From Bugula neritina (taxonomy: Eukaryota; Animalia; Bryozoa): a stretch of DNA of 64,000 bases. The stretch lies in the NCBI GenBank assembly GCA_964035545.1, contig OZ037768.1:7100741-7164740 (forward strand), given 5' to 3'. Made by a program: the position numbers and the translations under genes. The notes under the pieces are model-generated. The model searched no databases and was not told the DNA's origin. It saw nothing but the letters and a program-made list of their open reading frames with translations. Of this stretch, positions 8,481 through 64,000 are shown piece by piece; the stretch's first letter is position 1; every line of letters starts with the position of its first letter.

Positions 8481-11400
8481 GTATGCATAGCTTAATGTTG
8501 TCCATCTGTGAAGATTGTCACCGTTTAATACTCATATTTACTTGTTCAGTTTGACTTATGTTTAATTCTGTTGTTTACGTACAGTAGCAGATGAGAAACC
8601 TCGTAAGTATAGAACTACAGTCTGTGTACATGCAGTTGTTGGCTCATAAGCTCTGCATGGCAAACTTTTATTCTCACCTATGTGTCATGTTAAATCTTTA
8701 AGTATCTTTGTTAGAAGTTGCTATAATTAATGACTTTTAACTAGTTCTAACGCTTATTACTAATAATTGATTAAATTATCAATCTTGAATTTATTTTGTA
8801 ATAATGCAAGAAATATAGTGTTAATATGTTTGGTAATCAACATAAATGCAATAAATTTTGTTTGATTTGGCAATTTACATTAACAAATGCTGTCACAGCA
8901 CTTGTGGTTAATAAACACGAATTTTGTCTACAACACCGAGTGTTAATATAAGTATGTTATTGTCGGTCTGTGTAAACATTATCTTTCTACTGTTTCTTGC
9001 ACTGCATGCCCAGCTATACATGTGATGTATGATTAATATAGTATGACAATGTTTTTGCTAGTAAATAATATGTTATTCTAAGGATATACATATTATATTA
9101 ATACTCTTATAATAGTGTAAACAATTTATATATTTTCTATTGAGATATTTGTGAATATACTTTTTATGCATAAATCAACATATACTGTAAACTGTGATTA
9201 GCAATTATAATTGGAAATAGTAAATTTTGAGCTGTTACTTTGAATTATCATGAAGGGACTAAAAGTAAATAGCCATTAGGTAAATAGTTGAATTTATTTT
9301 TTTTTGCAGTTCCGGTAGAGTTTGTTGTGCCACTTAAAGATGTAGACGTGAAGGAAGGCAAGACGGCTGTGCTAACTTGTGAAGTTAACAAAGCAGATGC
9401 TCCTGCCATATGGTGTAAAGATGGTGAACAGATAACTCCCAATGAGAAATACACAGTCACTGTCGAGAACTACACACACAACCTCATTATATCCGATTGT
9501 GATATATCAGACGACTCCGAATATACAATAACAATCGATGAACATACTTCTGTTGGCAACGTTTTTGTTGAAGGTATTAGAAATTCTCACACATTTATGT
9601 GTATCTAATCATCACTTTTTATGTGTATCTAATAGCTAGTTACTGTTTTAGTTATATAGCTAAAAAGTATTATGATCTGAATGAGTAATTGAACTATTGT
9701 TTTTAATTGTGTTTAATTTCTAATCGAAAACTTTTTTATTGAAATTATAAAATTTCCATTGCGTCAACTTTTTTAAAGTATAGTCTTTTGCGTTGTACAT
9801 GCCTGTATCTAATACTATGACTCAAACTATTTCTATACACTTACAGAGGATGTGGTGGGTATTGTGAAGGGATTAGAAGACCAAACTGCTAATCAGTTAG
9901 ATATCAATGTGTCATTCACTTGTGAATTGAGTAAACCCAATGTCAAGGTCACATGGTACAAAGGGAAGACACCAGTAACCAACACTGACAAATATACAAT
10001 AACAAATGTTGACTGTCACTACACTTTACTCATTAGAGGAGTTAGACCAGATGATGAGAGTGACTACACTGTGGAGGTTAAAGGAAAGAAATCCACCGCT
10101 GAGCTTTTCATAGATGGTAAAGTTGTGCTTTGTTGTTAAGTCTATCTTATATGTTATAGTATTTTACAGGTTTCTCTTGCTACTCATTAAAATTGTGTAT
10201 AAAAGTTAGTCTGTGGAATAATTGTAAATGATGGAATGAGAGCATGAGACCAATATTTTAATATAAATTGGCAGCACTTGCAGCCGCTGATGACCTACTA
10301 AAACTAGGTATAACTAAAATTATGCAAATATGGTCAATTCATCAACACAGTTTATAAATTGAATGATACTAACTAAAACTAGTTGAAGCATTGCTTACTC
10401 AAAATGATAAATTATGGTTTAGGTTTGCCACAAGCAACATAGCTTTTACTCTCTAACAGGGTTGCTATTTGTTTTCTCTCTGTTGTCAAACACGAAACTT
10501 TCTATTTACTCTCAGTTGCCCCTGAACTGACCCTGGATGAGAGTTGGAGCAGGAAAGTCACCCTACGAGCTGGTAAGAGTAGGACGTACAAGATTCCGTA
10601 CACGGGACATCCAGAGCCAAAGATTGAGTGGACGTTCAACGGCAGCAGTCAGCTGCCTGCTACGGTGACTACAGCCGCAGACGACAGAGATATTACCATG
10701 AGCTTGAAGAATGTAGTTAGGAAAGATACTGGACTCTACACTCTACATGTAAGCATTAGATGTTCAAGTAAATTGAAATTAGTTGAAACAAATTGTATTT
10801 CCAGAATAATTGTCATTCTTTTATCTTGATTATGTCGAGTCATAACTTTATTTAAAAATTCAGCAAAATCAAAGCTCTTCTTAAATATTGTTAAAAGGTT
10901 AAATTAGATTAAGTGCACTACTATATATGTTACCAGCGTTAGGCAAGGAGTTCCTCCTTATATTAGTTATGCGCTTGTAGAATGTATATATGCTAACTTC
11001 TACTTATCTGTATGTGACACAGGTGTACAATGATATTGGTGAGACGACAGGCAAACTGGATTTAGAGGTTGTGGATTGCCCAACTAGTCCTAAGGACCTT
11101 GCAGTTGATAATATCTCAGAGGATTCCGTTTCATTGAGTTGGAATGTTCCGAATGATGACGGTGGATCTCCTATCACTGGATATCTTGTGGAAAAGAGAG
11201 ATGCTAACCGGTATATATCTACATGTGTTGTCTGTTTAGAAACTCACGCAAGTTTAAAGTCACTATTCCTGTGAGAACCCAGCTGTTGGAAAGGGTTTTT
11301 TTAAATGTGGGCTGAAGACTCATTATTCATATGTGGCACGGGAGTAATTATGACTAGATGCTCTTTCTAACGTCACCAATGGTCTTTACTGGAGATCGAA

Positions 11401-14400
11401 CCCATGACCTCGGGTTTACTAAGCCAGCGCTCTAGCCTCTAGACCACGGCTGCTCCCTTTGTGTTAGCTGCTTTGTTCCTTGCAAGATATTTTGGTATTC
11501 AATATTCATGTTCAGGTTTGATAGATATGCAGATATTTTAGAACAGGTTTTACAGTAACTAGAGATTATATTATATACTGTCGGGTAATTTGAGAGTTTG
11601 TTGCAGGCGTACTTGGCAGACGTTGGAGACTGTGCCAGAGCTAGCCTGTGTTGCAAGTCAACTGGTAGAAGACAACTCCTATGTGTTCCGAGTGTCTGCT
11701 GTGAATGAGTACGGTGCCAGTGAACCTGTAGAACTGCTCAAACCTGTGACGGCAACAAGTAGTATTGGTAAGTTTAGTCAGAGATGGATGTGTTTTTTTT
11801 ATTTAATCTCATCATCATCGGGAATAAAAACAGTTCGTTTGGACAATAAATACTTGTTTCTCACTTGTTATATCAAAAGTTCAATATGCAGTAATTAGAG
11901 CAAACACTAAATGTAAGGAAACAAAGAAAGTTAAATATTTACTATGGAAATTATTTCGCTTAAGCTTTTTGTTTTTGTTTGTTATTTAAAAAATTTGTGT
12001 GTTTGGTGGCATCTTAACAGCAGCAACATAAATATATATATACATAAATATATATATATACATATATATAAATACAAATATGTATATCAATCCAATCAAC
12101 GCTGTATTTCTGCCGTTAGCCGTGCCAGATGCTCCGGGAGCTCCTGTTGTGTCAGATGTGACAGCAACTACATGCCAACTGTCTTGGACATCACCGGAGT
12201 ATGATGGTGGAAGTGCCGTCATTGGCTACTTCTTAGAAAGACAGTCTGATATCAGTCCTCGCTGGATTCGAATCAATAAGAGTGCGGTTAATGACACCTC
12301 CCTATCTGTCAATGATTTAGTCGAAGGAACTGAGTATATATTCAGAGCCATTGCTATTAACAAGAAGGGAGAAAGTAAACCCAGTCTTCCTTCAGAGAAC
12401 ACTCTTGCTAAAAATCCAATTGGTAAGTTGAAATCAATTATTTTAGAAAATTTATATTATTTATATTCTTGTTGCTAAGTACGATGAAATATTTTGTGTT
12501 ATGTTTTCAAGTTTTTTTGTTAATTTTGTTCGATAAGTTTCATTTTACAGATGAATTCCCATTTCAACTAAGTTACTATGTTACTATGATTTGTATTTTG
12601 AGACAGTGTCAGCAATAATGAGGAGCAGCAGAAGCACCCTGTAAATGACCTACACATTTCTCAGATACTTAGGCTACCTACTCTTTCTGTTACCTGCTTC
12701 ACTCTTTCATTCAAATACCATTCCAATCCAAATATTCCAAGTTTCAATTCAGTGCAATACTTATAGTCCCTGAAATTCATTCTATTAGTTCATATTATTT
12801 ACTTTAAACTTACATGTGGCTGATGAATATATTTTATTGTCTAGCTTTTATGTTAGCATTTGGTGGCGGCCAACATAATGTTGAGTTTTTATTTTTATTT
12901 CTTCATGTTGGAGTTTGAAACCGGACAAAGTTTGGTAAACTGCCAAATAGTTAATATATTCAACTGCCTTACTAGTTTATGTCTTTATTAATATACGTTG
13001 ATTTCTGAGTCATGGCATTGTACTATTTTTAAGCGAGTTTGTTTACATTCCTGATGTAGATGTGCCAGGTGCGCCTAGCATACCGGAAGTGTGTGAGATC
13101 ACAGATGAGAGTATGACAATCAAGTGGACATCTCCAGAGTACAACGGAGGTGCTCCTATCAACCGCTATACAGTGGAGTACATGAAACAGGGAGATAATA
13201 AATGGGTGCCACTGGAGACAGGTGGCCGGGGGTTGTCCTACACCGTGCAAGGCCTACAAAAAGGGGCTGGCTACTTATTTAGAGTGTCTGCGACTAACAA
13301 GGTATAGTTTTTGACGCCGAAGCCATATAATATGCATTTGTTAGTAAATAATTTGATATTTTATTCTTTTAAGTTTGTGTTTCTCAAAAAAAGTTACAAT
13401 GTTCAGTATTTAAATTTGAATTTATACTCGTTATTCTCAAATATTTTTAAAACGTTGTAATCTTTCGCTAAACAGTCTGGTACTGGAGAGCCGTCCATTG
13501 TCCATCCTGATAACTATACCATCTGTCAAGCTCCAGTGGTTGGTGATCTGCCAGAGATTCTTCACCCACTGGAAGACATCACGGTGATCGCACCTGAGCC
13601 AATTCTCCTGGAATGTGACCTTGATGTAGGGGAACCAGCAGCAGAAGTTGAATGGTGAGTTTTGCATAAATGGTTTACGGCATAAATGGTTTGTGGAGTC
13701 ATAAAATACCATAGATTTGTTACTTGTCACACAACCAATCGGCTATACTTGTTATAAACATATCAATTAGGTATAAAAATGGAAAGCGAATGGTAAAGGA
13801 AAAAAGAATAAAAAGAAAGGTTAATGCAGATGAAGAATTGGCTAGCCTAGAAATTACGGATTCAAAGCTGTCTGACGCAGGCACCTACAAGATGTTAGTC
13901 ACCAACAAGTTGGGATCTGTTGACTGCAGCTGTGTGGTTACAGTTCACTGTAAGTATGATGAAGACGCCATCTTGTTGTCTTGTAAGCATGAAGAGTAGG
14001 TGTAAAGAGGTGATTTTTTAACTTTAATAAACCAAGTTATTTAAAACGTAACTGAGTTTACTTCATACTACCTTAATAACTCTGTATCAGAGTTGGTTGT
14101 ATACAATATCCCTTAGCTTCTGGACTAATATGTAAATATTCTTAGTATGCTCATATTTTGTGGAGTTCATAAGCTGTAATTTTAAATGATTAATTTTTAT
14201 TAAATTGATGATGTAAGCAATTTATATAGTGTTGCTTATGTGAATTTCTCTACCTTGATGTCGTTACTTTCATGTACATCAGGATGCGTTCATTCAGATA
14301 CCAACTGAAGATATTGATCTGTTGTCCTCTATTACTAGGTAAACCTACGTTGACATATGACCAAGCTCAGCTCTCTACTACGCAGCAGATTGGTTCTAGT

Positions 14401-17400
14401 CTAACAATACCAGTACAAGTTGCGGGTTTCCCTGTTCCAACTGTGGAGTGGACTTTCTCTGGCAAACCAGTGAATGAGTCATACGTCAGCACCGACAGCA
14501 CCTCTACTAATCTGTCGATCAAACATCTTGAGCCTCAACATAATGGAGTTTTCAGCGTTAAAGCATCTAATGTGGCAGGAGAGACAACTGCTGAGTTTGA
14601 AATAATATTGAATGGTTAGTTTTGTTGAAGTATAAAGTATTGTAAGGGATTTGCTGTGATATCAAAATTTTTAGAATTTTTTTGTGATTTTTCTTTATAT
14701 TTTCGCTACTCTATAATAGCTGTGTTGTATGGAGGTATTCTCTCTAATAGTACGCGGTCTATCACTCCTATTTTTATTCTCAGAGACATTGTGAACAGGT
14801 TGAGGCATTGCTTGGTTTACTACTTTATTCCATATTCCATTGCTTGATTTTGGTAGCATTTTTAACTTTACTTAAAAATGCTGTAACTATTTACTAAATT
14901 TTTCTTTAGACAAGCCAGCACCACCTCAGAATCTGGTAGTAACCTCTTTCACAAAAGACTCCATTTCCATCTCATGGACAGCACCTACCTCTGATGGTGG
15001 GTCGCCTTTGACTTCTTATATAGTTGAAAGACGTGATGTGAAAAAGAACACATGGATGACTGCCGGCACCGTTAAACCCGATACTTTAGAGTTTACAGTC
15101 ACCAAGTTGATTGAAGGAAATGATTACATCATCAGAGTGTTTGCTGAGAATGCTGTTGGGGCCAGCGAGCCTGCTGAGACTGAGCCCACTACAGCTAAAG
15201 TACCATTTGGTAAGTATCATCTAGTATTATAGAATTTCAAATACGTTTATTTATATCAACAATCATCAACATATGGGATACACTTGTTTTTTGTATAAAT
15301 TTGCTTGTCATATAGGCCTGTGTATATAACCTTTACTTGAGATAGTTTTGTAATCATTTTTTATGAAGCCTTGCCATTTCTTGTAGACAAGCCAAGTGCA
15401 CCTAAAGACCTGACTGTCACAGACGTTACTGGGTCAGCGGCTGTTTTAAGCTGGAGTCCTCCTGACTCAGATGGAGGCTCTCCTGTATTCAACTATGTGG
15501 TGGAGAAGAGTACGACTACCAGCGGCCGGTGGGTGAGAGCCAGCAAGTCTACGATCCCTGACACTGAAGTTACTCTTTCTGATTTAATCGAAGGAGCCAA
15601 CTATGGATTCAGAGTTTCTGCTGAAAACGAGGCTGGTGTGGGACCACCATGTAAACCAATTGGCCCTGTTGAAATTAAAGAGCCTACAGGTTTGCAAACT
15701 TGTATATTTAAAATATACTCACGGCGTTTCTACTTTTTTGTTGCTATAAAGGCTCAAATATGGTAATTATAATAATATTATTATAGCATTGAAATAATAT
15801 AATAAAAATAAATAAAGTAAACTTATATTTCAAACCCCACTGTATTCATCTTTAGAGTCAATTGTTTCTAGTGATGTTACTAGCCCTAAGGATATTATAT
15901 TAAAACTATGGTATTAATTCAACATTTTCATTATTACTATATCGATAGTATTAAAATGTGTTTTATATTTTTAGTGGCTGTGACGTTTATAACACCGCTA
16001 ACTGACATTGACTGCAAGGAAGAAGAAACTGTAACTTTCACCTGTGAAATCAACAAAGAAGGCTGCACATCAGAATGGAGAAAAGATGGTGAGCCTCTTG
16101 CTGCCGAGCCTCGGTTTGAGACTAAAGTCAGCGGTACTGAGCATTCTCTGACCATCTGTGACGTGACCCTGGATGACGAAGCTGACTATACTGTAGTTAT
16201 TGAAGATACCACTTCTACTGGCGGTCTTTTTGTTGAAGAGGACATAGTGGAGATTGTTTCACCCCTACAGGATGTGATCCTTAGTCAGGTGCCACGTGAC
16301 GTTGTGTTCACCTGTACAGCTAACAAAGGCAGCTGTCATCACAAGTGGATAGTAAACGGCAAGCCACTGCCTGAAGACAATCGATTCACTGCAACCACTG
16401 AAGGCAACAAATATATTTTAACCATCAAGGATGCTACTGAGAAAGATGATGGGGAATACACGATCGTCATAAAGGGGCGCAAATCCTCTGCTGAGCTTAT
16501 TGTAGAAATTCCTCCTCAAATTAAGTTTGACAAGAAATACGCATCACAAGTGGTGCTCAAGGCCGGGCAGATGACTATCTTTGAAGTACCATTCAGTGGT
16601 TGGCCAGTGCCAGTTGTCACATGGATGTTCAATGGGGCACCCTTAGTTACAGACAAGCGTGTTTACGAGGAAACTATTTCTGGTATCAGTTGCATTCATG
16701 TAAAGAACTCGAAACGCACAGACACCGGAATCTATTCGGTCGAGATTGCCAATGACCTTGGCACCGTGTCAGCTGATATTGATCTGTTAGTAGTTGACAA
16801 ACCGCAGCCTCCTTGTAACTTTACTGTAGTGAGTGTGGATGAGAACTCAGTAACGCTGTCGTGGGATGCGCCCAGTGATGATGGCGGACGACCAATATCC
16901 GGATATGTCGTAGAGAAGCGAGATGTTAACAGACGTACATGGGTGCCGGTTGGTGAATGCTCGGATACTACTTTGACTGTAGGGGATTTGATTGAAGGGC
17001 AGAGCTACATGTTCCTTGTGAAGGCTGTCAATGAAGTTGGCCAGAGTGAGCCTGTAGAGACAGAACAGCCTGTTAAACCAATAAGTTCCCACAGTAAGAG
17101 CTATTTTCAGTTATTTTCAGTAATACTTGATTTAATTTCAATATCCTAATTAATTAAAAAGTTTCAGGTTTACATTTCTTGCAGAGTAAATGTGACACAA
17201 AAAAATAGCATAAATATGGCATGTAATGCAATGTTTATGTTTCAATTTAGTGTATCATTTCTATGAAAAAAACTTGTTATAGATTATTTAGTAAAGTTGG
17301 TCATTTTTCTAATCACTACTTGTTTTAAATTTTAGCTGTACCGGATTCACCACAGTCCTTGACCGCAGATGATATAACTCCAACAGACGTTACTCTCACT

Positions 17401-20400
17401 TGGTCACCGCCCACCAATGATGGTGGTGCACCGGTAGAAGGTTATCACGTGGAGAGATGCAGTGACAGCAGTGGCCGATGGGTGCGGCAAACTCGCTCAC
17501 CTGTTACTGAGACAGTGTACCATACTGACAATCTCATGGAGGGAACAGAGTACGCATACCGTGTTGTGGCTGTGAATAGACGAGGGGAGAGTGTTCCTGG
17601 TCAGCCATGTGAGCCGTTCATTGCAAAGAATCCCTATGGTATATAGCTTTAAACTACTAGATTATTAGTTACTACTATAATTTATTTGTATGAATTATTC
17701 TTTTTTGTCATTTCTTTTTGACTAATTCTCAAGCTACTAGTTTCAATAGCTTCAGTGTTTTATTCACTAATGAAAAGCTGTGTACGCATAAAATAGACAG
17801 CTAAATAGGCTAAAACAGGGTATTTTTTTCTAAAAATCTGTATGATATGAGTTGTTATGCTTAATTATGTAATATTTGGTTCCTATTTTTTACAATGTAT
17901 GTGTATCTAGAAATTATTTTGTTTAATTCATAGATGCACCTGGTGCTCCTGATGCTCCAGTCATCTCTGATGTCACAGACACCACTATGAAGGTATCTTG
18001 GCAACCACCAAGTAATGATGGGGGATCACCAGTCATAGAATACTTCTTGGAGCAGAAAATCTCGAGTGACTTCAGATGGTCTCCAGTTACAACTAGTCAG
18101 ATTATTGAGACAAACTTTGTAGTAGACAAACTAAGAACTGGTAAAGAGTACAGCTTTAGAGTAGCTGCAGCCAACAAAGCCGGAACTGGTAAATGGTCAA
18201 CTCCCTCAGAAGATGTGCTGTGTAAAGCACCTATTGGTATGTCGAATTTTTATGTGCTTGTGATTCATATTATTGAAAGTCAGCAAAGCGTAAATACAGG
18301 CTCTAATGTAATGGTTTATTTTATAAACTTTTTACTAAATTAATGTTGATTATCATTTGCAAATTAAAATAATACTACAGACATGAAGGGTGTGATTTTG
18401 TTTTACTCATAGTTGTAAATTCAAGTTGTTTTTATTTTACAGTTGGAAACGCTCCTGAGTTACTGGAAGGACTTGAAGACCTGAAAGTCGTTGCTCCTGA
18501 GGCTATTGAGTTTTTCTGTGATGTGGATCTTGGCTCGCCGAAAGCAACCATAACCTGGTTTAAGAATGACAAGCCATTGACATCTAGTGAAAAATATGAT
18601 ATATACTATGAGGAGAAGAATGAGTCAGCTATACTCTCGGTTATTGACACGACGCTTGAGGACGCGGGATTATACAAAGTAGTAGTTGCTAATGACCTTG
18701 GACAGGTGACCTCTGAAGGGACACTAACTGTTCATACTAAGCCAACTATTTCTGCTGACTCTTCTTCTAAAGTTTCATCTACACAGAAAGTAGGCTCTGT
18801 GTACACTTGCACTGCCAACATCACAGGATATCCAACACCTACAGTCACTTGGCTGCACAATGATGTGGCACTCAGTGGAGCTCTGGTTAATGTCGACACC
18901 ACAGACAGCTTTTCCTGTTTTAAGTGGAAAGACCTCACCATGGAGTCTGCAGGAACTCTCGTAGCTACGGTTTCTAACGAAGCTGGTTCTGCTTTGACGA
19001 CATTCAATTTAGAGATCATTGATAAACCTTCTCCTCCAGAAAGCCTGGAAGTCAAAAGTGTGACCAAGGATTCAGTTGATGTATGCTGGTCTGCTCCACT
19101 TTCTAATGGCGGAAGTGAAATTACGTCGTACATAGTAGAGAGAATGGATGTAAAGAGAGGCAACTGGGTATCAGTTGGTACAGTTAGACCAGATGTTACA
19201 GAGTTTACGGTATCTAAACTTACTTGTGGAAATGAGTATCTGATTCGAGTGTTTGCAGAGAACGAAGTGAATGCCAGTGAGCCTGCTGTGTTGGTAAACC
19301 CTGTTGTACCAAAGAATCCCTTCAGTGAACCGGGACCACCTCAGAACTTGGCTTGCAAAGACATCACTCCTTCTAGCTGCACGATTGTTTGGGCAAAGCC
19401 GTTGTCTGATGGAAATTCTCCTATAACTGGGTACACAGTTGAAAGGAAGTCTCAGTATAATACCAGGTGGACCAAAATTAACAAAGCGCCTGTACAAGAT
19501 CTGGAATTAGAGATTGGAGATTTGGTTGAAGGAACAGATTACGAATTCCGAGTATTTGCGGAGAATGAAGCTGGTGCTAGCGTACCCAGCAAGGCTATTG
19601 GACCTATCACTGCTCAGGAGCCCAGAGGTAATCAGTCACATGTGCAGCATTTTAAATTAATTAATAGTTTTTTAGGTTTAAACTCAATGTTAATTATTTT
19701 TCTCTTTATTTTAATAATTTTTTTTCTGTTTTTTGTAGTGCCGCTAGTATTTGTGAAAGAACTCATTGATCTAGTGGTGGAAGATGAAACGACCGCAATA
19801 TTTGAGTGTGAAGTCAATAAGCCAAACATTTCTGCTCATTGGAATAAAAATGGCACTCGAATTCAACAATCAGAGAAATACTCATTTACTGTAGATGGAA
19901 CAAAACATCGACTAGAAATAAAAGACTGCAGCAAATTTGACGCTGGTACTATTGAGGTAGAACTGGAAGATGTAAAATCAGCTGCTTCACTTGTTGTGGA
20001 AATGGTGACCGTTGAGCTTACAAAACCGCTAGAAAATATTGCTAGTGAAGAGATGCCAAAGACTGTCAAATTCATTTGTGAATTCTCAAAAGCAGATTTG
20101 CCGGCTAAATGGTACAAAGATGGAAAGCTTTTGGAATCGGACAAGAAATACAAAATGGCTACAACGGGTACAGAATACTGTTTAGAAATCAAGAATGCAT
20201 CTGCAGAAGACGAAGGCTTATATTCTGCATCTGTGAAAGGAGCATCAACTGAAGCTTGTCTAAAATTCCTCATCAGACCTTCATTGAAACTTGCGAAGAA
20301 ATACGAAGAAGTGGTCGTCGTCAAAGCCGGTCAGTCTACAGTCTTTGAAATTCCTTTTATTGGATATCCAGAACCAACAATAATTTGGCATTACAAAGGA

Positions 20401-29400: not shown

Positions 29401-32400
29401 GATGTTTTGTTCAGGTGTGCCTGGACCACCGAGGTTACTAGAAGCAAAAAATATAACTGCTACGACAGCCTCTTTGTCATGGAGTGCTCCAGAAGATGAC
29501 GGAGGCACACCCATTACCAACTACCTCATTGAGAAAAAGCAGTCAACCGGCACTAGGTGGTCTAAAGTCAACAAGTAAGTTCTAAAGTAGTTAGAGTGTG
29601 TAGTTGTGTAAGAATCGAGTGTTTGAAAATTAGTTTTCCACATTTAACGTGTTGGACGAATTAGACTGCAATAGCATTTTTATGCATTGATATAACTGTT
29701 AATATTAGTCTACTAGCTAATGCCTCCTTTTATATGTATTTTAGGGAGAAGGTGACTGATCATGACTATGAGGTTACTGGCCTTGTGGAGGGAAGTAATT
29801 ACCATTTCAGGATCAGTGCTGAAAATGTTGCTGGTGTTGGATCTTCTAGTAGCGAGGTTGGACCAATTACAGCTAAAGATCTAATCAAGTTCACAATCCC
29901 GCTTGAAGATCAAGACGTAAAAATTGAGGACTCAGTAGAACTTATGTGTGAAGTTAACAAAGACAATGTTTCTGCTACTTGGTACAAAGATGGCAATGTG
30001 CTCAAGTCTAGTGATCGGTATAACATTGTTCAAGATGGCCGCCGTCATCGATTGCTGATTAAAGACGTGACTTTGGATGATGAATCTGAGTATTCGTGCA
30101 AGGTTGTTATATATTCTCTTAATTTTCTTTTTATTATTTCAATTTTCATTGTCCATTTTCGACATCTTAAATGTTTTTGGGTTTTCAAGTGTATGACATG
30201 CCTGTGAATTTTGTATAAGGTTGAAGATGTGACTACCAGCTGTGCAGTGTTTGTTGAGGAAGACGATATCGAATTTACCAGACATTTAGAAGATGTTATC
30301 ATAAGAGAGATTCCATCAACAGTTACATTCAGCTGTGAGGTATGCTGTACACTCTGGTGTTATGAACTGCTGTACTCTCTGGTGTTATGAACGGCTAGCA
30401 TACAAGATTATAATAGCAAGCTTTTCCGATTATAATTTTTCGAACTGAGTTTTTGTTGGACATAATTATAATCTTTATGTTGCTGCTTGTAACACTTCTT
30501 TTATTGCATGAGGTTTTTGCCATTTTAGCCAAACAAAATTAAACGCAGAGGTAATTGTGATTTTACTAAAATGTTGTCTAACTAATCAGGCAGTCGAACT
30601 CTATTCAATTGTTTATGTAATCTTGGTGTAAACAAGCTTGGTCTATGTGTGACCAGTACTTACTTCATGGTAAGAAGAGAATATTATGAACACACTGATT
30701 GGTTACTTGTGCAGGTACCTCGAGAAGGTTTACATGCCAAGTGGCTGAAAGACGGTGAAGCGCTTCCTGACAAACCTAAGAAGTACAAACCGTACAGCAA
30801 GCACCATTCATACGCTCTAGAGATCAAGGATGCTGATGAGAATGATGAGGGAGACTACAGTGTGATTATCAAGGGGAAGAAATCATCAGCTACTCTTTCT
30901 GTTGAAGTATGGAAGCAGTTGTTTTTGTGATTTTTGTAAAAGAGCATTTAAATTTTCAGACTGGTGATAGTCAATTTATAGTAATACCTGACTATTTGTA
31001 GCACATCTAGCTTTCAAATTTTTATATTATCAAATGTGTTTGCTCAACATAATGTGCTATGATTGTGTCATGTCTTGTAGGTTTATCCATCCCTTCATAT
31101 CAACGAGAAGCTAACAGAGACTGTCACTGTCAAGGCTGGTTCAGCTACTGTGTTTGAGATACCTTTCATTGGTTACCCCAAACCAGAAATCATGTGGTTC
31201 TTCAACGAGAAAGATTTACAGCAGAGTAAGAGACTACAGGTAGAGACGGTGTCTCGACTCACCTCATTGAGACTGAAGAACATTGAGAAGACTGACACTG
31301 GTGTTTACACTGTGCTGGTCAAGAACTCTGTGGGAGAAATATCGGCAGATATAAAACTAGTTGTGCAAGACAAACCGTCTGCTCCTCAGAAACTGACGGT
31401 TGCTGATGTCACGGAAGATTCAGTAACTCTTGCTTGGAAGGTAACAATTTTAGCTCTATTGTAAGCTTTCAGCTTGTAAGAGGTGTTGATAAAATTATAC
31501 TGTAAACAATTAAACCCAATTTATTATCCAAGCAAAGTTTATTTACTATAAAATTTTGTTAGCTCCAATAATATTTATTATACTGCAATGAGGTGCTCGA
31601 ACTTTTACATGGCAGAAAATAATCTTGCTTTTTATATATCTTTTTAATGTGGTTTCTGTGTGATAAATACAAATGTTCAATATCGTTACTAGTGGAGTTT
31701 GTTTATTTTTGTTTCCTATTCTCTAAATGTTCATTTTGCTATCCAATTATTGTTTTTTAGGAACCAAAGGACGATGGAGGCTGCCCAATCATTAGATACA
31801 TCATCGAAGGTCGGGTTGGTAGTCGTAGAAGTTGGCAACAATTTGTCCGCACTGACAAAATAGAGTATACAATATCTCGTCTTGTGGAGGGAGAGAAGTA
31901 TTCTTTCCAAGTAATGGCCGAGAATGAAATCGGAGTAGGAGAGCCGACGGAGATTGACAAGCCAGTAGTACCTGCTAGCAAATTCTGTATGTTTGAAAGA
32001 TGTTTAACTTTTTGTTAACTGCTCTGTCCACAGCCTCCTCAATGCATGTTGGTTACCAATAAATGATTTATACTAATTCTGATTTTAGCTGTACCAGGAA
32101 AGCCTGCTCCTCCAGATGTTGCAGACGTGTACAGTGATCATGCTACTCTGACGTGGAAACCACCAGTCAATGATGGCGGCACTCCAGTGACAGGATACCA
32201 CCTTGAAAGGTCAACCAACAATAGCGGTAGATGGGTACGTGTCACCAGGGACCCCATCAAGCCTTTGACATACGAAGCCTCTAACCTACTAGATGGTACA
32301 AATTATGAGTGGCGAGTCATAGCTGTGAATGCGAGAGGAGAGAGTGAGCCCTCAGAGTCATGTGACTTTGTCGCTAAAGATCCGTGGGGTAAGTCACACA

Positions 32401-35400
32401 TTTCACGCCACATTTTCTACTTTCAGTAAGAACTTTACATTTCCCCAATATATAAGGCTAAAAGTTTGAGGAGAAATTCAATGTAGAGTTGCGATGAATT
32501 TTTATTTTGAAATTCCTTTTTAGGTAAACCTGGTCAGCCAGAACCTCCGATTGTGTCCAACATCAAAGCTACATCTGTTGACCTGTCATGGCAACCACCT
32601 AAGTCAGATGGCGGTGCAGCGATCCATTCCTATACTGTTGAGTTCAAGGCCGTTACCCAACATAGGTGGATAAAGTCGATAGAAGACGTCTCTGAAACTA
32701 AACACAAGGTCACTGGCATAGTGGAGGGGTATGACTATGAGTTCAGAGTAGCTGCCACTAACAAAGCTGGCACTGGACCATTCTCAGAACCATCCAAGTC
32801 TGTTCTTGTGAAGGAAACTATTGGTAAGCATATTTTGTATTGCTGTCCGGGAAAAACGTATAAGGGTACCTAAATTTTAATATTTGAACTGAAGAATCTA
32901 GCTCTCTTTATTATCTTTTTAAATGTCTGAAAATGAGCAAATCAAATCAGTTTATTACATACATTTTGTGTGCGTGTTTTAGTTGGCAAGGCACCCAAGT
33001 TTACTAAGCGCCTAAAAGACACTAAAGCCACTATTCCTGGAAAAGTAAAGCTTTCTGCTGATGTTGATCTTGGAAAACCTACGGCAGAAATAAAATGGTT
33101 TAAAGACTGGAAGGAGCTGTATCCTGGACCAAAGTATGGTATTAGTCAATCTAAGCACAAGGCAGAGTTGGAGTTTAAGGAGCCGCAGGTTAATGATGCT
33201 GGCAAATACAGGTGCTTAGTGAGAAATGCCCTCGGAGAAGATGAGTGTGAAGCCATCCTCACCATTAACTGTATGTATATGATATACTCAGTACCTTTGA
33301 ACTAATTGAAATTATGTTTTATATATTTTATTTTTCCAAAATAGCTTTGTAATATTTTTATTTAGTATTTTCAACTATTAATATATTAACTTTTTTCACT
33401 TTTGATTTTGGAAAACACCAATTTTTAATAAATTCCGTGCTTGGTTTTTTTGTAAAAGCCTAAAGCTATTGGAAAACTTATTGGCTTTATGTAAAGTTTT
33501 TTCAAGTTCTACTAATATTGTGCAAAAGTAATAAACTGCAATGTGTGGTATTACACTATTACATGACTTTAATCGCCAACTGTTGTGTTATAGGTAAACC
33601 ATCCTTGAGCTGCAGCCAAACCAGCCATATTGTCAAAGCCGGCACATCATTACTTTGTGAGTGCACAGTTTCCGGCTCTCCCCAACCTAACGTCACTTGG
33701 ACGTTCAATGACAAACCTGTTGACGCAGATTATGTCAAGGTAGCAGATACCTACACCATTGTGTCTCTGCCTAAGATAACGGCAGCTCAAGCAGGTAGCT
33801 ACAAGGTCGTAGCTGAGAATGCTGCCGGAAAAGATGAGCTCACAGTCTCTGTTACTGTACTCGGTAAGTTACCTGCTATAAATATGTAGACTGTGTTGCT
33901 AACACAAACTGGTTGTAGTTCTGGGGCTCTGTATATCAAATTTTAAACCAATTTACCTCAAAATTACATTCCCATACAATTACTGCTGTAACTTTTATGC
34001 TATTAAAGTGATAATTGCTTTTAGGCAGTGATATACGTGACAGGTTTTGTTCAGTTGGTGTATTGAAAATGGACTATAGTAAATGTAATAAAATGTTCTT
34101 ATAACAGTGATACTTCATTTTGTGTTAACATGATGTGTTATAAATCTAATAACTACTTGATAGTACTTCGACATGTTTTCCAATTTCTTGTGTTAAGTTG
34201 TTTTTTATGTTATAATTTGTGTGTTCTAGATAAACCAGCTTCTCCTAAGGACTTCAAAGTGACTGCCACTCATAAGGACAGTGTTGAGTTGAGTTGGAAT
34301 ATTCCAGAATATGATGGAGGTTCGCCAATCACTCAGTATGTTATTGAGAAGCAAGATCTGTCTAGAGGCACCTGGTCAGCTGGTGGTAAAGCTCGGCCGA
34401 GTGCTACAGAGTTTACAGTAGGCAAGCTGACTGAGGGAAAAGAATACTTGTTCAGAATATACGCAGAGAATGAAGTAGGAGTTAGCTCCCCTGTTGAAAT
34501 CAAAAAGCCAGTAACAGCTAAAAGTCCTTACAGTAAGTTTAGGCAATATACTGCTTTGTGTTTTTAATTGGTTTCAACAGATAAATGTTTTACATGTATT
34601 TTAAAGTGGTTTGCTGTAAAAATTTGATATACTTTTTCAGTTTATAATAGCAATTTGCCAGCTACTCATCACCATATACTATATAACATGTTTTGGCTGC
34701 AGCTTGTGTCACAAGTATGAAGATTTTAACTGCTTATTGTATCATAACAAGTAAAATGGGATCACAATTTATACAGTGTTAGTATTTTAAAGTTGAAACT
34801 ATTTTGAGTTGTTCATATTTTCTATCATCACCTTTATGAATTGCGATATTATTTATTTGTAGACCTACCCAGTGAACCTTTAGCAGTAACAGCTTCAGAC
34901 ATTAATAGTGGCTCTCTAGTTCTCTCATGGAAAGAGCCAGTTAAAGATGGTGGTGCTGCTATATCCGGCTATTATGTTGAAAGAAGGACAGGTTTCAACC
35001 CGAGGTGGGCAGCTGTAAACAGAAAACCCGTACACATTACTAAGATGAATATAGATGACCTGGCTGAAGGCAGAGAGTATGAGTTTAGAGTTGTTGCTGA
35101 AAATGAAGTCGGCGTTTCCAAACCCAGCGAGATTGCTGGACCATTCAAAGCACAAGAGCCATATGGTGTGTAGAACTATTTGCCTCTCAGAATCTCTAAC
35201 ATTATCATGAATTATTATTAACTAGTTATCAGTTTAATGCGATTGGTATGCTAATTTGTATGTTTGCTTTTTAATTTTTTTCCTCCTATTTATGAGTATA
35301 TCTTTATTCTTTTAGAGCCAATTGAAGTTTTAGCGCCATTAAAGGACACAATTGTAAAAGAAGGTGAAAATGCTGTACTGGAGTGTAAGATTAGTAAACC

Positions 35401-38400
35401 TAGAGTGAAGGCCACATGGTTGAAGGATGGTAAACCATTGAAGGATGAAACTAGAAAGAGTATAAAGCATGATGGCCAGCTTCATAGACTAACCATCAAC
35501 AAAGCAGAACTTTGTGATGTTGGCAAATACTCTGTCAGCTTTGATGATGATGACTGTATACTCGAGGCTAATGTAGACATCAAAGGTACCTCTATTTTAA
35601 TTTCAGGTTGATATATTTTTATATTTCTAGAATTATAGATGTTTATACTGCTGTTTCAATGTTTATTTGTTCAAGTCACTTTATTACTAGTACATTGGCA
35701 GTAAAATCATCTGAAATGGCTTTTTAATACTACTTCATTATTGTATTTATTTATAAACAAGTTACAAATAATAATATACACTGGTGGTCAATAAGTTATG
35801 TTTATAACAAGAATGTTGTGCCCTTTTTTAAAACATCCTTTTTGTCTAAAGATTGTTGTATTAATATATTTATTTTTTTTATTTTTAATATATTTTATTT
35901 GGAAATAATTTTTAGATAATAATATACAATGTTAATCAATGAGTCTAGGTTTATAACAACAATTGTGTTGTGCCTTTTGTTAGATTTATCAAAGTAATGA
36001 TTATATTTTGCAGAAGATGACGTTGAGATTGTTAAGCCATTGGAAGATATGGTTGTGAAAAGTATGGGCCATCCGTTGACATTTGAATGCCATCTATCTC
36101 GCCATGTCGCTGAGTTTGCTTGGATGAAGAATGGTAAACCGTTGATCTCGGATAAACACTACAAGCTGATGCAGAGCGACGCTGTATATAAACTCCTTGT
36201 CAGCCATGTTGAGCCCGAGGACGCTGCAGAATACACCTTCTCGTGTCGGGGCAAAAAGACATCTGCAAACCTTATTCCTAAAAGTATGTAGGATATGCTT
36301 GTTTTAATTTTGAATATCTTAAAAGTGAGAAAAAAGAAATATAGATAGTTGAAAGTAAATATTGTAAATGCTGCAAGTGTATGTGTAAGCTTGTATTTTT
36401 ACACAAATTATTCAGAAATTTCATTGATTTGCATAAACAGAGTTATAAAAACTGATCGATTTTCATGCTACTTAATAGACATTTCAGCTTTTTCGTGAAA
36501 ACAGCAATACTTCTTTTCTTGCATCTACAGTACCTCTGAAATATTCTTATGATGCATTTTGTAGTTCCACCAGATCTCAACCATCTTGGCAAGGCTAAGC
36601 GTCACATCACGGTGAAGGCTGGCTCAGTAGCTATCTTTGAAGTTCCATTCACAGCTTATCCAACCCCTGAGGTGAGCTGGAAACACGGCAAAAATGATCT
36701 TCCTAAGGAAAAGCGATTCCAAGAGGAGACCATTTCCTGCGTATCTACGTTACGAATCAAAGAATGTCGGCTGGAAGATGCCGGTGAATATATAGTTGTC
36801 CTGACCAACGATCACGGAGAACTATCGACAACTTACCGATTAACCGTGTTAGACAAACCACAGGCACCAAGAGACTTGAAACTAGACTCCATGACCGAAG
36901 ATTCTGTTACACTATCGTGGATGCCTCCTTTGCATGATGGGGGAAGTCCGGTCAAACAGTATGTCATTGAAAAACGAGAGGCATCGCGTCGAAGCTGGCA
37001 GAAAGTTGGCACGACTCGTGACACTAGATTCAATGTGAAGGGGTTGCTGGAAAGTGAAGGTTACTTTTTCCAAGTGCGAGCTCAGAATGAGTTTGGAGTT
37101 GGAGACGCTGTTGAGATTTCCCAAGCAGCTACCCCTGCCAGTCAGTTTAGTAAGTAATTTAAACATATTACTTGTAAATACTTTATTTGTGAAATTAGTA
37201 TGATTTGAAATAAATAAGATTATGTTTATCAATTCATTATAGTTATGTAATATTGGTTTTGCTTTCTGTTTTTATTCTTTAAAAATGTATGCGTTTATCT
37301 AAAGATAAGTTGCTTGTAACTAGATATACATAATATACATTATGTTTAGGTGTCCCATCAGCACCATTAAAGCTGGAAGTAACTAACCCTACCAATTCAT
37401 CAGCTCATTTAACTTGGCATCCACCTACTAATGACGGTGGAACTCCTCTGATTGGTTATTATGTGGAGCGATCCACCAATGAGAGTGATAGATGGTTGAG
37501 AATCTCAAGAGATGTACTCACACATACCAACTTCAGTCAGTCTGAGTTGATTGAGGGCACAACTTATCAATATAGAGTAGTAGCCATGAACAAGAAGGGT
37601 GATAGTGAGCCTAGTGAGCCCTCCACCCCCTTCACATGTCAACCGCAGATCTGTAAGTTTTATTTCTGGACATTTATTGCATAGTACTTTCCACTATCCA
37701 TTTACTGCTTCAGAATTTATCATGCTTTAAGCAATATCTACTATTTTTTTATACAGCCAAGCCGAGTGCACCTAATGGTCTTCAAGTGCTGGAAACAAGC
37801 AAGAACTCAATTTCACTTGCCTGGAGGATACCTAATACAGATGGTGGCTCCCCTATAACTGACTATATCATTGAGACCAGGATCTCGGGATCCAAGAACC
37901 GCTGGGAGAAGCTGGACAAGGAGCCGTTGACTGAAACCAAGTACATCCTAACTGGACTGAGAGAAGGCAGATATTATGATATTAGAGTCAGCGCTGTCAA
38001 TGCTGCCGGAACTGGACCTGCCACTGAGATCAAGGGAGATGCTGGTTCAAGGTCTACACCTGGTAAGATTTGTTGAAATACTTGTTCTCAGTGCTGCTAA
38101 TGGTTCCACGTTATAATGTAGCTGTATGTAAAGTTCTGATTTGCTCCGTTGGTGTTTTTTTTAGTTTACGTTTGCCTTTAAAGTAAGGTTATGACTTTAA
38201 TATATTTTATATTCAAGTTAAAAAATTAAAACTAAAACTTTCACAAAAACTTGAAAAGCAATTTTTTTAAAAAGCAAAACTATTGCAAATCTTTAGTTAA
38301 TTTTAATTTGAAAGACCCTCAAGTTTTGTTGAAATAATGAAACCGTGTTTTAGGGATTAGTAGTTTAACAACGCTTATTATTTCATTTTCATCAAATATA

Positions 38401-41400
38401 AGATTGTATATTAAAAATTGTAGTTGGCACAGCACCCCAAATTAAGAAGGAACTCAGCGATGTTTCTGTTATTTTGGAAATGCCAGTAACTTTGAAATGC
38501 TCGTATGACAATGGCGGTCTGGATACAGAAGTCAAATGGTACAGAGGTAACAAGGAGATCTCAAAGTCTAGGAAGTATCAGCTATCTCAAACAGGCCGGG
38601 AGGCTACTTTGACTATTAAAGATGTTCAGACTGCTGACTCGGCGCAATACACCTGCCTGATCTCTAACTCAATTGGCAAAGCGTCATCTGCTGCTAAAGT
38701 TACCGTCAGCGGTAGGTTATACGCTGATGCTGTCATGCAATAATAGTATTATAACATAAATAAAGTATACAACAGAAGGTAATCACAACGATTTGTCAAA
38801 TGGTTATCACAATCAGAGATTGGTTCTTCTACTAGGCTATATACCATGGGGAAGTCTTAAAATCCTTACATTTGTACTTTTAGTCAAAAACCACATTCTT
38901 TTTCTCAGAGGGGATCTTTGAAGTACTAACAGAGACTATATTTAAGCTCTTGTTGAGTTTTTTTAACCAAACAAACGCTGTCATTGAGTTTGTTTTCTAC
39001 CAAATACTCCATTCGGATACCTCTCAGTTTATTATTAATCTAGTACTAAAAATATCTCCTGATTTATATTAGATAAAGACAAAAACAAGCGCACAGGTAA
39101 CGTTTACTTGCCAACACGATATGCACTTGGCTTTATGTAACAGCTGGTGCAAGCATTTACTTTAACATATTTGTTTATTTTATCAGCTTTGTAACTATCT
39201 GGTGTGGCAAGCAAAATGTTCAACGTGCTTACGCATTAACTTAACAATTAATATATATATTTTATGCTTCTGCAGCCTCACTTGTAAAGTCATGTATAAG
39301 TGCACACGTCAAGTTTATATGTATATTTGTTATCATTTTAAATTTGCATGATTTCTGTGAAAATAACAACCTACTGCATGCTAATTAACAACCGCAGTTT
39401 GTTTGTACTTTTCATTTTCATTTAAATGTATCATTACGTTTATTAGACTATTTGATTAAATTATAATTTAATCTGTGTTTCCAGAGCCACCTCAAGTACA
39501 CTTTGACAATCTGCCTTCAGCCGGTGTGCAGATTAGAGTTGGTGGTAAGCAAACCATCTCTGCCACTGTGTCCGGTACTCCTTTCCCTCAGGTTTCTTGG
39601 TACAAAGATGGTAAACCCCTAGAGCCATCTGTTGCCAAGACTGAGGTTGGTGAATTCAGCACCCACATTATCTTCACTGATGCAGATATTGAGGCTACAG
39701 GCAGCTACCGAGTTGCAGTGGCCAATGAAGCTGGCTCCAGTTCTGCAGATGTATATGTGACCGTGAAAGGTGGGCAACTCCTTAAGTACAGCAAAACGAT
39801 TCTCTCTTCACTGAACTGAGTCATTTGAAATTAACTTTAGATATATCAAATAATTTGTTTTGTTTTAAATGTCAGGTAAACCTAGTCCTCCTCAGGATTT
39901 GAAAGTCTCATCTATTGACAATAAGAGGGCTGTTCTCAGCTGGTCCCCGCCTGAATTCAATGGTGGATCTGCAGTCACAGGCTATGCTATAGAGAAAAAA
40001 GATACCAGCACCAAGTCTGGTGACTGGAGCAGCGCAACAACTGCCACTGATACAACTGTGACAATCACAAGGCTGATTGAAGGTCACAGCTATTTGTTCA
40101 GAGTGTTTGCAGAGAATGAGATTGGTGCAAGTGAGCCTATCACGACGCAGCAACCAGTTACTGCCAAACTTCCATATCGTAAGTAATCTGGCACATTTAT
40201 AATGTAATTCCTATTATTTTATTTTTAAAAAATACATAATTCATTATAGTTTTTTTTTGTCTCCAAGTAAAAAATGTAAAGTTTCACATTCTCAGTTTCG
40301 GATAGTAATTAACATTTGCCTTTAGTAATAAATTTTGCTTTTTGAATTTACAAATATATTTGTCACTTCATGTTAGTTTTTTCATTGTTTGTTCATATAG
40401 GTGAACCAGGTGCTCCAGTTAATCTCTTCGCTAAAAATAGACATAAAACTGGATTGACTTTATCTTGGGAACCACCCTTAGATAATGGCGGCAATGCAAT
40501 TCTGGGCTATGTCATTGAAAGGTCTCGTGGCAATGCAGCTCGATGGATCAGGGTGAGTGGAACGTTTTCAACACTACCAATAATATGTGCTTACTTTTAG
40601 GACCTTTCTGCATCTAACACTTCTATTATATTATCGGGAAGTCTAAGACTAGCTGATAGTAACCCAAGGTCTTATTTTATATGTGTTTTACGATGTAGAA
40701 AGATATAATATCCAAAAATTATTATTTTATGTCACACTATGCATACACAAAATTAGGTTATGGAATATGTTATGATGCACATATTTTCATGCTAAATATA
40801 TTTAGTCATTCTCAAGTTTTTCATACTATAAAACTCATAGAAGTATTAGACTAAATAACCTTAATAAGTATTCAACACAGTAACAACTAAGCTACTGGAA
40901 CCCAACAAAACTGCAACCTGAGTTCTGCGTTTCTACTTTATACTCTAGAATTTGAAACTTCCAAATCTTTGTTCAATATATTTTATGATTGCCTAAAGTA
41001 GAGCAACACAGAAAAGATAGATTAAAACATACTATAAATTAATTATGTAATTTACTTCAGAAATGTTCAAAACAGTTTAAACATGATTAGTAAAACCATA
41101 CTGCTCAGTTATATCTCACTCATATTATTTCGTATCGCAGCTGAACAAGGACCGATTTAGACTCAATCAGTTTGATGTTGACAATTTGGTTGAGGGAAAT
41201 GACTATTCATTCAGAGTCCGTGCTGAGAATGAGGCTGGACTCGGTGAACCTGCAGTACTCGGGCCAATTGTTGCCAAGGCTCCATATGGTTAGTTGTTTG
41301 TTCTGTTCATTTACTTTGTAAGGTTTTCACTGCTAACTTTAGTGGGTGGCTGCACAAATAATTGGTGTAGCTGATTGACGATGGAATAACATGATCATTG

Positions 41401-57900: not shown

Positions 57901-59356
57901 ATGGGTGCTGCAGAGACTTTTGTGTACCCGTAAGTTGATTTGATTATTTTTGAGATAATTGAAGTCAATAGGCTTTATTGATCATTTAATATTTATTTAT
58001 AATTTAAGAAACAACTTATTGTATTGAGTGCATGTCTCCACTATCGAGCAATTAAGCCTTTAAGTATGAAAGACATTTTAAGTGGGTTAAGCCTTAGACC
58101 ATGCTTGCAACATGTTCTGGGAGTTCTTACTGTAGCTCAGGAGTAATTGTGCTCAGATACTCTTCCTGGCATCAATATAGACCTTAAATACTATAGGCTA
58201 GCTACAGCTGCTACCTCCATCTATTAATGTAGTATTATCGATAGTTTTAAGAGTATAGTCTCTTACTTTATGAATGCTGTATATTTCAACTGTAAAAAGT
58301 TACTGAGCAAACATGTAGCATTGCAACTTCAGCTAAGTAGACATAAGCTAAGTGTAAATAATACTTTTTAGATTGACAAGTCATGGATCTGCTGGGGTGA
58401 TAGGAGATGAGGTGGTAGAGAAGGATGATGATAACTTTAAGGAGAGAGAAGATAATGAAACAGAAAGAAGTAAGAGTAAGAGAGGACTCATTGAGACAAA
58501 GCCAAGGGAGGGAGAAAAGGAAAATGGGAAGCAGGACAAAATGAATTTGAAGAGCACTGATGAAGGAGGGACAGTGAAAGTAAGAGAGAATGGTAATGCT
58601 AAAGACAGGCTTGCTCAAAAAGATACTGAAGTTGCAATTGAGAAAGTAGTGGCTGAGAAGGAGAATAAAGCAAAGCTAGATGATGGGGCCGTTGAGAAAG
58701 GAAGGCGTGAAAAGATATACGAGGAGGGAGTGAATTATGAAATCAAAGAAGTGAAGGATAAAAGTGAAGTTTTAAATAAGGAGAAAGTTGACTTGGAGAA
58801 AGACGAAGATAAGCAGAATGGCAAAATAATAATGGAAGTAGAAATTGGTAAGGAAATTGTGGAGAAAGAAGTGACGGAGCAGACCATTGGAAAAGCTGAT
58901 ATGGCAGCAGTTGAAAATGTAAACAAGCTAGAGCTTCCTGGAAATGTACCAGCAGTGAAGAAAGTAGAAACTGAACAGGCAGAAGGTGATAGAGCTATGG
59001 CAGAAGTCAGTGGTATTGAGAAAGGAGAGGAGGGTAACAGAATGATAAAGAGAGCTAATGAACCTGAGTTGGCAGCTGAAGAGGAAATCAATACTAATGT
59101 ATATAATAATGGTGAGTTAGTGCTCAACATAGATACATACACCTTATTGTCTTTATTTAGCACCTCAAGATTATTTAATATCTTGTTGTACAATGATTGG
59201 CCTGTGCTGTATAAAGTATGACGACTATAAGCAACACTGACAACCCTTTCTGTTGTAGGAGAAAGAGTGGCTGAAGAGAGCAGCTCTCAAAGAAGCAGAT
59301 TCGCAAGATTTATGCGAAGGATATGCTGTTGTTGCGCCCCAGAGAGAGACGAATAA
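57901..59356 (+). CDS. Uncharacterised Glu/Lys-rich disordered protein with C-terminal basic segment and CCCC; about 288 aa from ATG 57901 or 321 aa from ATG 57802 (start uncertain)
   Basis: Exons ...57929 (CC|GTAAGT, phase 2), 58372-59111 (purine-rich, stop-free, G|GTGAGT) and 59259-59356 (ERVAEESSSQRSRFARFMRRICCCCAPERDE*); phases all compatible; AATAAA at 59412 and 59462. Confidence 0.72.
58135..58185 (-). mobile_element. Degenerate fragment of the same SINE body
   Basis: GCTCAGGAGTAATTGTGCTCAGATACTCTTCCTGGCATCA resembles GCACAGGAGCAATTATGACTGGATGCTTTTCCTAACATCA of SINE copy 2. Confidence 0.4.
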
Positions 59357-63992: not shown

Positions 63993-64000
63993 GTAACAAA

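What the first reader, a model, noticed from the sequence alone, without database searches (positions are those of the whole stretch)
9310..41288. Unfamiliar 10-domain super-repeat (Ig x3, FN3 x3, Ig x2, FN3 x2) x6: candidate thick-filament ruler
Seen: six consecutive units with identical domain order and nearly constant length (966, 970, 967, about 965, about 961, 970 codons). Position-specific signatures recur: Ig2 ends KGKKS.A.L, Ig3 has KAG....FEIPF.GYP.P, Ig7 has C.VDLG.P...W, FN5 has GY.LER.....RWVR. Known: vertebrate titin uses 7-domain (Ig-FN2-Ig-FN3) and 11-domain super-repeats, twitchin/projectin use FN-FN-Ig, and the 11-domain titin unit matches the roughly 43-nm myosin repeat. Inference: at about 4-4.5 nm per domain a 10-domain unit spans about 40-45 nm, so this may be an independently built ruler. 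I do not recognise this architecture as described.
Basis: partly seen in the sequence, partly recalled or inferred. Interest (0 to 1): 0.85.

Follow-up and report, generated by a model that had tools for sequence, protein, structure and literature searches.

The report
Bryozoan titin with 10-domain super-repeats
The Sallimus-type (I-band, kinase-less) titin gene of a probable moss animal ends in six copies of a 10-domain block related to the myosin-binding end of titin and twitchin; several other spiralian phyla multiplied the same block to almost the same length, apparently separately, but nothing yet shows that it measures or binds thick filaments.

Summary
In detail: six units of Ig3-FN3x3-Ig2-FN3x2, 962-970 aa each, at 9310-41288. 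Domains cluster by position (57/60 nearest neighbours).

The array is the C-terminal part of the Sallimus/connectitin-type titin gene. SESTD1-type spectrin repeats, Ig domains and PEVK-rich exons lie upstream. RNA contigs splice unit 6 into a kinase-less tail. Two twitchin-type kinase loci lie elsewhere.

Positions 3-10 align with the pre-kinase (last C-zone plus P-zone) segment of titin and twitchin; positions 1-2 are I-band-type Igs. The module is single in a bivalve and a rotifer. It is multiplied in bryozoans, a nemertean, annelids, Lingula and an unidentified marine animal, in two 10-domain registers (about 962-987 aa) and one 9-domain form, and units mostly group by lineage.

I found no description of this repeat; 'mixed' lophotrochozoan titins are noted in PMC12063666. 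Ten domains span 38-44 nm, so a match to 43 nm needs a straight chain. Six units span only about 0.25 um, which suits a filament-tip anchor better than a length ruler. Function is untested. The scan had not reported this repeat on other DNA.

The parts
181..6266 (+). Tandem array of 10 short I-band-type Ig domains (same class as unit positions 1-2); continues the gene from upstream of the window
6630..8480 (+). Pre-array Ig (position-3 type) followed by two FN3
9310..15689 (+). Super-repeat unit 1 (966 aa, 12 exons)
15975..19627 (+). Super-repeat unit 2 (970 aa)
19739..23105 (+). Super-repeat unit 3 (967 aa); its FN6 exon is 91% identical in DNA to that of unit 2
23106..29877 (+). Super-repeat unit 4 (965 aa); FN9 is split by a 2052-nt intron
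29878..35165 (+). Super-repeat unit 5 (962 aa)
35316..41288 (+). Super-repeat unit 6 (966 aa to the start of the next FN3)
   Evidence: RNA contigs join its last exon to 41540
41540..43514 (+). Tail FN3-Ig-Ig-FN3; the Ig-Ig-FN3 stands where titin has A168-A170 (position inferred from domain order)
   Evidence: splice joints in RNA contigs
44212..47478 (+). 1089-aa Arg/Pro/Ser-rich exon with no Pfam match, lying where titin and twitchin have their kinase
   Evidence: spliced to 43514 in four runs
47788..49840 (+). Three further, more divergent FN3 exons (47788-48062, 48780-49098, 49544-49840); the last coding exon is not fixed
   Evidence: in-silico only

Best explanation
This is the C-terminal, A-band-like part of the Sallimus/connectitin-type titin of a bryozoan (species assignment inferred). 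Shown from sequence: the gene has no kinase and ends in six tandem copies of a module made of two I-band-type Igs plus a segment collinear with the last Ig-FN3x3 and the P-zone Ig-Ig-FN3-FN3 of titin/twitchin. The module is single in some spiralians and multiplied in others. Inferred history: tandem duplication at domain-boundary introns, in the bryozoan line before the window's species split from the animal of L023, after which each unit was kept as its own orthologous position. Inferred mechanism: the N-terminal Ig/PEVK part spans the I-band as a spring, as Drosophila Sallimus does. The array lies along the outer ~0.25 um of the thick filament and binds myosin tails through its FN3 and position-3/8 Ig domains about once per 39-44 nm, giving a long multivalent anchor roughly in register with the myosin repeat. 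It would stabilise and centre the filament tip rather than set whole filament length.
For: Upstream, same strand: SESTD1-type spectrin repeats (PF25075 E 1.3e-9, PF24915 E 3.6e-4), Ig exons and exons with over 40% P/E/V/K, the order described for connectitin (PMC12198301). An 84-exon GT-AG chain from 15.6 kb upstream to 47478 is open for 11,293 codons. No kinase near the gene; twitchin-type kinases with FN3 arrays lie at C4:13.8 Mb and C5:4.95 Mb. RNA contigs splice unit 6 to the tail and the Arg/Pro exon. A whole-unit HMM matches titin and twitchin best in the pre-kinase segment (positions ~180-964, 516-662 bits) and spiralian relatives at 770-1174 bits. Best PDB matches are A-band titin and MyBP-C. 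Units mostly group by lineage, and L023 units pair one to one with window units 2-5 at 100/100. Sallimus C-terminal Ig/FN3 reaches the start of the myosin filament (PMC9886278).
Against: No localisation, binding or muscle-expression data. RNA support covers only 41.3-47.4 kb; the link to the upstream PEVK part is in silico, though relatives' protein models join the Ig tandems to the array. Positions 1-2 and 7 are not typical A-band Igs. Lineage clades for bryozoans, L028 and Lingula have moderate support only (81-91 bootstrap), Helobdella's two units do not group, and one origin for the bryozoan and L028 arrays is not rejected (p-AU 0.49). Concerted evolution could mimic independent amplification. 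A kettin-type linker motif was not found.
Confidence: 0.6

Rival explanations
1. True ruler or template: each unit spans exactly three myosin crowns (about 43.5 nm) and the number of units sets the length of a thick-filament zone.
For: Straightened titin domains repeat at ~44 A (bioRxiv 2023.04.11.536274), so ten span ~44 nm. Periods of 962-987 aa occur in bryozoans, L028/L030, Tubulanus and L031 in two different registers. Position-specific surface motifs are kept across phyla.
Against: At titin's native packing a unit spans 38-39 nm. Six units are about 0.25 um, shorter than typical half thick filaments (my knowledge). Lingula has 863-867 aa units. Invertebrate filaments have uniform crowns and very variable lengths.
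Confidence: 0.2
2. The array is a stiff spacer or a repeated docking scaffold (for example for P-zone-type partners, or matched to the ~38.5-nm thin-filament repeat), not a myosin-tail binder.
For: The estimated 38-39 nm span equals the troponin/tropomyosin repeat (value from my knowledge). Half the domains are Ig. Position 1 is consistently acidic (mean net charge -10.7). The unit contains a P-zone-like Ig-Ig-FN3-FN3.
Against: The FN3 and position-3 Ig domains are of the A-band type. No actin-binding motif was identified.
Confidence: 0.12
3. Length-neutral tandem duplication: the ~10-domain period reflects duplication mechanics on a module with internal 5-domain similarity, and selection acts only on the total number of binding domains.
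For: Positions 4/9, 5/10 and 3/8 resemble each other. Introns flank most domains. Bivalve and rotifer instead extend a plain FN3 tandem of 13-44 domains after one module.
Against: Two different breakpoint registers both give ten domains. Unit length stays within about 1% over six old copies, and unit order is conserved between two species.
Confidence: 0.08

Closest known systems
Drosophila Sallimus / I-connectin (connectitin locus CG15822-zormin-sls)
   Same: Spectrin repeats upstream, Ig arrays, PEVK-rich exons, C-terminal FN3, no kinase, separate twitchin genes in the genome
   Different: Sallimus ends in only a few FN3 domains (five, from my knowledge); here there are 60 domains in six super-repeats plus a 1089-aa Arg/Pro-rich exon
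Vertebrate titin A-band (7- and 11-domain super-repeats, P-zone A164-A170)
   Same: I-set/FN3 super-repeat with position-specific domains; unit positions 3-10 are collinear with the last Ig-FN3x3 and A164-167; similar scale (966 vs ~1084 aa)
   Different: Five Igs per unit with Ig-Ig-Ig and Ig-Ig runs, whereas titin's A-band has Ig pairs only in the P-zone (PMC12981300); no kinase or M-band part; 6 units, not 6+11
Twitchin / projectin (unc-22, bent)
   Same: Ig-FN3-FN3(-FN3) sub-modules; same pre-kinase segment; I-band-type Igs before the first FN3
   Different: No kinase; not an Ig-FN3-FN3 array; the genome has two other loci with twitchin-type kinases; modules fall apart from twitchin modules in a quick tree
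Lophotrochozoan 'mixed' titins (PMC12063666: Crassostrea XP_034304301.1, Mizuhopecten XP_021365920.1); Lingula XP_023933258.1, Tubulanus XP_074642623.1, Helobdella XP_009016785.1, Pinctada KAK3083483.1, Adineta CAF3878648.1
   Same: The five proteins I could read carry the same module, at 31-44% identity per unit
   Different: Database entries are labelled only titin, twitchin-like or hypothetical; copy number and register differ. The paper notes mixed features but describes no repeat. The two accessions from the paper could not be fetched.
Myosin-binding protein C
   Same: Positions 1-4 align in order with C3-C4-C5-C6
   Different: MyBP-C is a single ~11-domain protein without the third FN3 or the Ig-Ig pair in that place; best read as shared ancestry of domain types

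Membership tests
Sallimus/connectitin-type titin | SESTD1/zormin-type spectrin repeats upstream on the same strand | tested here: met
   (PF25075 above its cut-off; PF24915, PF00435, PF25101 below theirs)
Sallimus/connectitin-type titin | PEVK-rich segments (over 40% in 250-aa windows) between Ig blocks | tested here: met
   38/42, 10/13 and 8/8 windows in three upstream exons
Sallimus/connectitin-type titin | No C-terminal kinase; C-terminal FN3 domains | tested here: met
Sallimus/connectitin-type titin | Kettin-type Ig-linker repeats with conserved linker motif | tested here: inconclusive
   Ig exons with linkers are present, but my motif pattern found almost no matches
Sallimus/connectitin-type titin | One transcript from the I-band part to the array | tested here: inconclusive
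   Open 84-exon chain in silico from -15.6 kb; no RNA laid there; chain not extended to the spectrin region
Sallimus/connectitin-type titin | Z-disc anchoring and I-band span in sarcomeres | not testable with these tools
   needs microscopy
Twitchin/projectin | C-terminal MLCK-type kinase | tested here: not met
Twitchin/projectin | Ig-FN3-FN3 repeat array | tested here: not met
   compare
Chordate titin | 7- and 11-domain super-repeats with single Igs | tested here: not met
   PMC12981300
Chordate titin | Kinase and M-band Igs | tested here: not met
Chordate titin | P-zone-like Ig-Ig-FN3-FN3 then Ig-Ig-FN3 | tested here: met
   (collinear match, partly forced by domain order); an extra FN3 lies between the two parts here
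Thick-filament ruler (functional class) | Repeat spans 43 nm on the filament and copy number sets length | not testable with these tools
   estimate 38-44 nm

The most novel reading that the evidence does not exclude
Several spiralian phyla independently turned one P-zone-like module of their I-band titin into a 10-domain super-repeat because ten straight domains match the three-crown (about 43.5 nm) myosin repeat. That would be convergent evolution of a thick-filament template outside chordates, with natural variation in copy number (1, 3, 6, 8 or more) available to test the titin ruler hypothesis.
Probability: 0.25. Interest if true: 0.85.

Novelty: new variant of a known kind. Interest (0 to 1): 0.62.

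Why it matters
The usual picture gives protostomes an I-band titin without A-band super-repeats and leaves open whether titin split in protostomes or fused in chordates (PMC12198301). A P-zone-like, kinase-less module at the end of spiralian Sallimus-type titins fits an ancestral full-length titin that was duplicated and lost complementary parts (inference). Its repeated re-expansion to about 970-aa periods, with different copy numbers in different phyla, offers a comparative test of whether Ig/FN3 super-repeats are selected to match myosin periodicity and to set filament or zone length.

Tried and rejected
Rejected: twitchin/projectin (no kinase, other order, other loci hold the kinases); chordate-type titin (no kinase or 7/11 repeats); a recent or artefactual duplication (units 34-48% identical; one-to-one orthologues in a second species); a receptor-type Ig/FN3 protein (best matches are titin and MyBP-C; no transmembrane segment seen in the translated exons, not formally tested).
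Led nowhere: the ESM Atlas returned only generic titin clusters. Ten literature searches found no description of the repeat; most subscription papers are not in the library. The Lingula and Tubulanus loci could not be fetched, so Lingula's missing FN5 may be a gene-model artefact. The animals of L023, L025-L031 could not be named. The tree is a quick, unfinished one and includes seven wrongly picked modules; one search is the tree relied on. No structure was predicted, because inter-domain geometry would not settle the span.

Full report
Observation. The window holds a many-exon gene on the plus strand. A 57-exon model of 5997-47478 with GT-AG introns has no stop codon. HMMs built from the window's own domains give II FF, then IIIFFFIIFF six times from 9310 to 41288, then F II F. 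Pfam confirms I-set and fn3. Units measure 966, 970, 967, 965, 962 and 966 aa and are 34-48% identical. Domains group by position: 57 of 60 nearest neighbours share the position, far outside 5000 shuffles. Introns recur at equivalent places.

The gene. Beyond the array come FN3-Ig-Ig-FN3, a 1089-aa Arg/Pro-rich exon and three more FN3 exons. RNA contigs of four runs, 95-99% alike, show the joints from unit 6 to the Arg/Pro exon (three of these runs are only guessed to be RNA, but the joints skip the introns). No kinase lies in or near the window. Twitchin-type kinase exons lie at two other loci that also have FN3 arrays. The Ig1-3 block matches strongly only at this locus. Upstream on the same strand are tandem Igs, exons with over 40% P/E/V/K, more Igs, and spectrin repeats of the SESTD1 type 63-89 kb away. 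This is the order described for the connectitin locus, CG15822-zormin-sls (PMC12198301). A chain of 84 exons from 15.6 kb upstream to 47478 is phase-compatible and open for 11,293 codons; this link is in silico. The genome is 216 Mb. The closest relatives come from marine metagenomes, one of them a plastic-debris sample that I recall as rich in bryozoans. Earlier AI notes call the genome Bugula neritina (unchecked).

Where the unit comes from. A whole-unit HMM matches titins and twitchins best in the segment just before the kinase, over unit positions 3-10 (516-662 bits). This is the last Ig-FN3x3 plus the P-zone Ig-Ig-FN3-FN3, a pattern found nowhere else in titin's A-band and conserved in twitchins (PMC12981300). 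The match is partly forced by domain order. Positions 1-6 also match the start of the Ig/FN3 block of echinoderm twitchin-like proteins (442-447 bits), and positions 1-4 align with MyBP-C C3-C6. The unit thus reads as the start of an A-band region joined to its end, with the middle missing (inference).

Relatives. One copy of the module, followed by an FN3 tandem, is in Pinctada and Adineta proteins and in contig L029. Lingula has two 9-domain units (863-867 aa) and one full module. Tubulanus, Helobdella and contigs L027 and L031 repeat it in another register, Ig2-FN3x3-Ig2-FN3x3, at 974-983 aa (Helobdella's spacing is irregular); L031 has at least eight copies. An unidentified marine animal (L028, L030) has at least six complete units in the window's order. 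A second, probably bryozoan, contig (L023) has units that pair one to one with window units 2-5 at 52-67% identity. In a tree of 31 units, bryozoan (91/98), L028 (88/92), Lingula (81/94), Tubulanus (100/100) and L027+L031 (100/100) units each group together; Helobdella's two units do not. One clade of bryozoan plus L028 units is not rejected (p-AU 0.49). Separate amplification is the simplest reading and is firmest for the two registers, which have different breakpoints; concerted evolution is not excluded. Position-specific surface motifs of the FN3 domains persist across phyla.

Mechanism. Shown: architecture, absence of a kinase, relationship of the domains to A-band titin. Inferred: the N-terminal part is an I-band spring and the array lies on the outer thick filament, as the C-terminal Ig/FN3 of Drosophila Sallimus reaches the start of the myosin filament (PMC9886278). 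In human titin eleven kinked domains fit 430 A, and a straightened chain repeats at about 44 A per domain (bioRxiv 2023.04.11.536274). Ten domains therefore span 38-39 nm if packed like titin and about 44 nm if straight. Six units give 0.23-0.26 um. I rate a multivalent tip anchor in rough register with myosin at 0.6, a true ruler at 0.2, a spacer or scaffold at 0.12 and length-neutral duplication at 0.08. Gymnolaemate bryozoans have cross-striated foregut and tentacle muscles (PMC5992719), where this can be tested.

Known versus new. [quoted passage not shown] Ten searches found no account of this super-repeat, but the library lacks most subscription papers, including work on polychaete connectin-like proteins that I recall. 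The gene is a member of a known family. The repeat, its derivation from a P-zone-like module and its recurring ~970-aa period appear undescribed. Verdict: new variant of a known kind, interest 0.62.

Procedure notes. Database searches were run exon by exon, by reference. The joined spliced model was built only inside scripts and was not sent to any search tool; that joined search was left out.

Noticed in passing
   Followed up: partly
window 17884-18231 and 21578-21925: The FN6 exons of units 2 and 3 are 91% identical in DNA, including about 50 nt of intron, while the units overall are 48% identical in protein: probably a recent gene conversion.
   Followed up: no
window 44212-47478: 1089-aa Arg/Pro/Ser-rich exon with no Pfam match, in the place of the kinase; spliced in RNA contigs.
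   Followed up: partly
L031 1-24792 (JGI 3300012469): Nearly intron-free contig with at least eight units of the other 10-domain register (Ig2-FN3x3-Ig2-FN3x3, 974-981 aa); its units pair with those of L027; probably an annelid, not identified.
   Followed up: partly
L028 and L030: Unidentified marine animal with at least six complete units in the window's domain order at 31-41% identity, in very long exons.
   Followed up: partly
G000:C4:13.78-13.81 Mb and C5:4.91-4.95 Mb: Two separate loci with FN3 arrays and twitchin-type kinase exons (60-66% identity to Anopheles twitchin), suggesting two twitchin genes.
   Followed up: no
G000 small contigs (for example C72, C86, C104): Many kinase hits interrupted only or mostly by TAA/TAG, suggesting contigs of an organism with another genetic code, such as a ciliate, in the assembly.
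   Followed up: no
window 63350-63586, plus strand: PhyH dioxygenase exon of a downstream gene; 53826-54229 and 63390-63997 share about 84% DNA identity.
   Followed up: no
window 58358-59218, plus strand: 287-codon Glu/Lys-rich open frame with no Pfam match; unclear which gene it belongs to.
   Followed up: no
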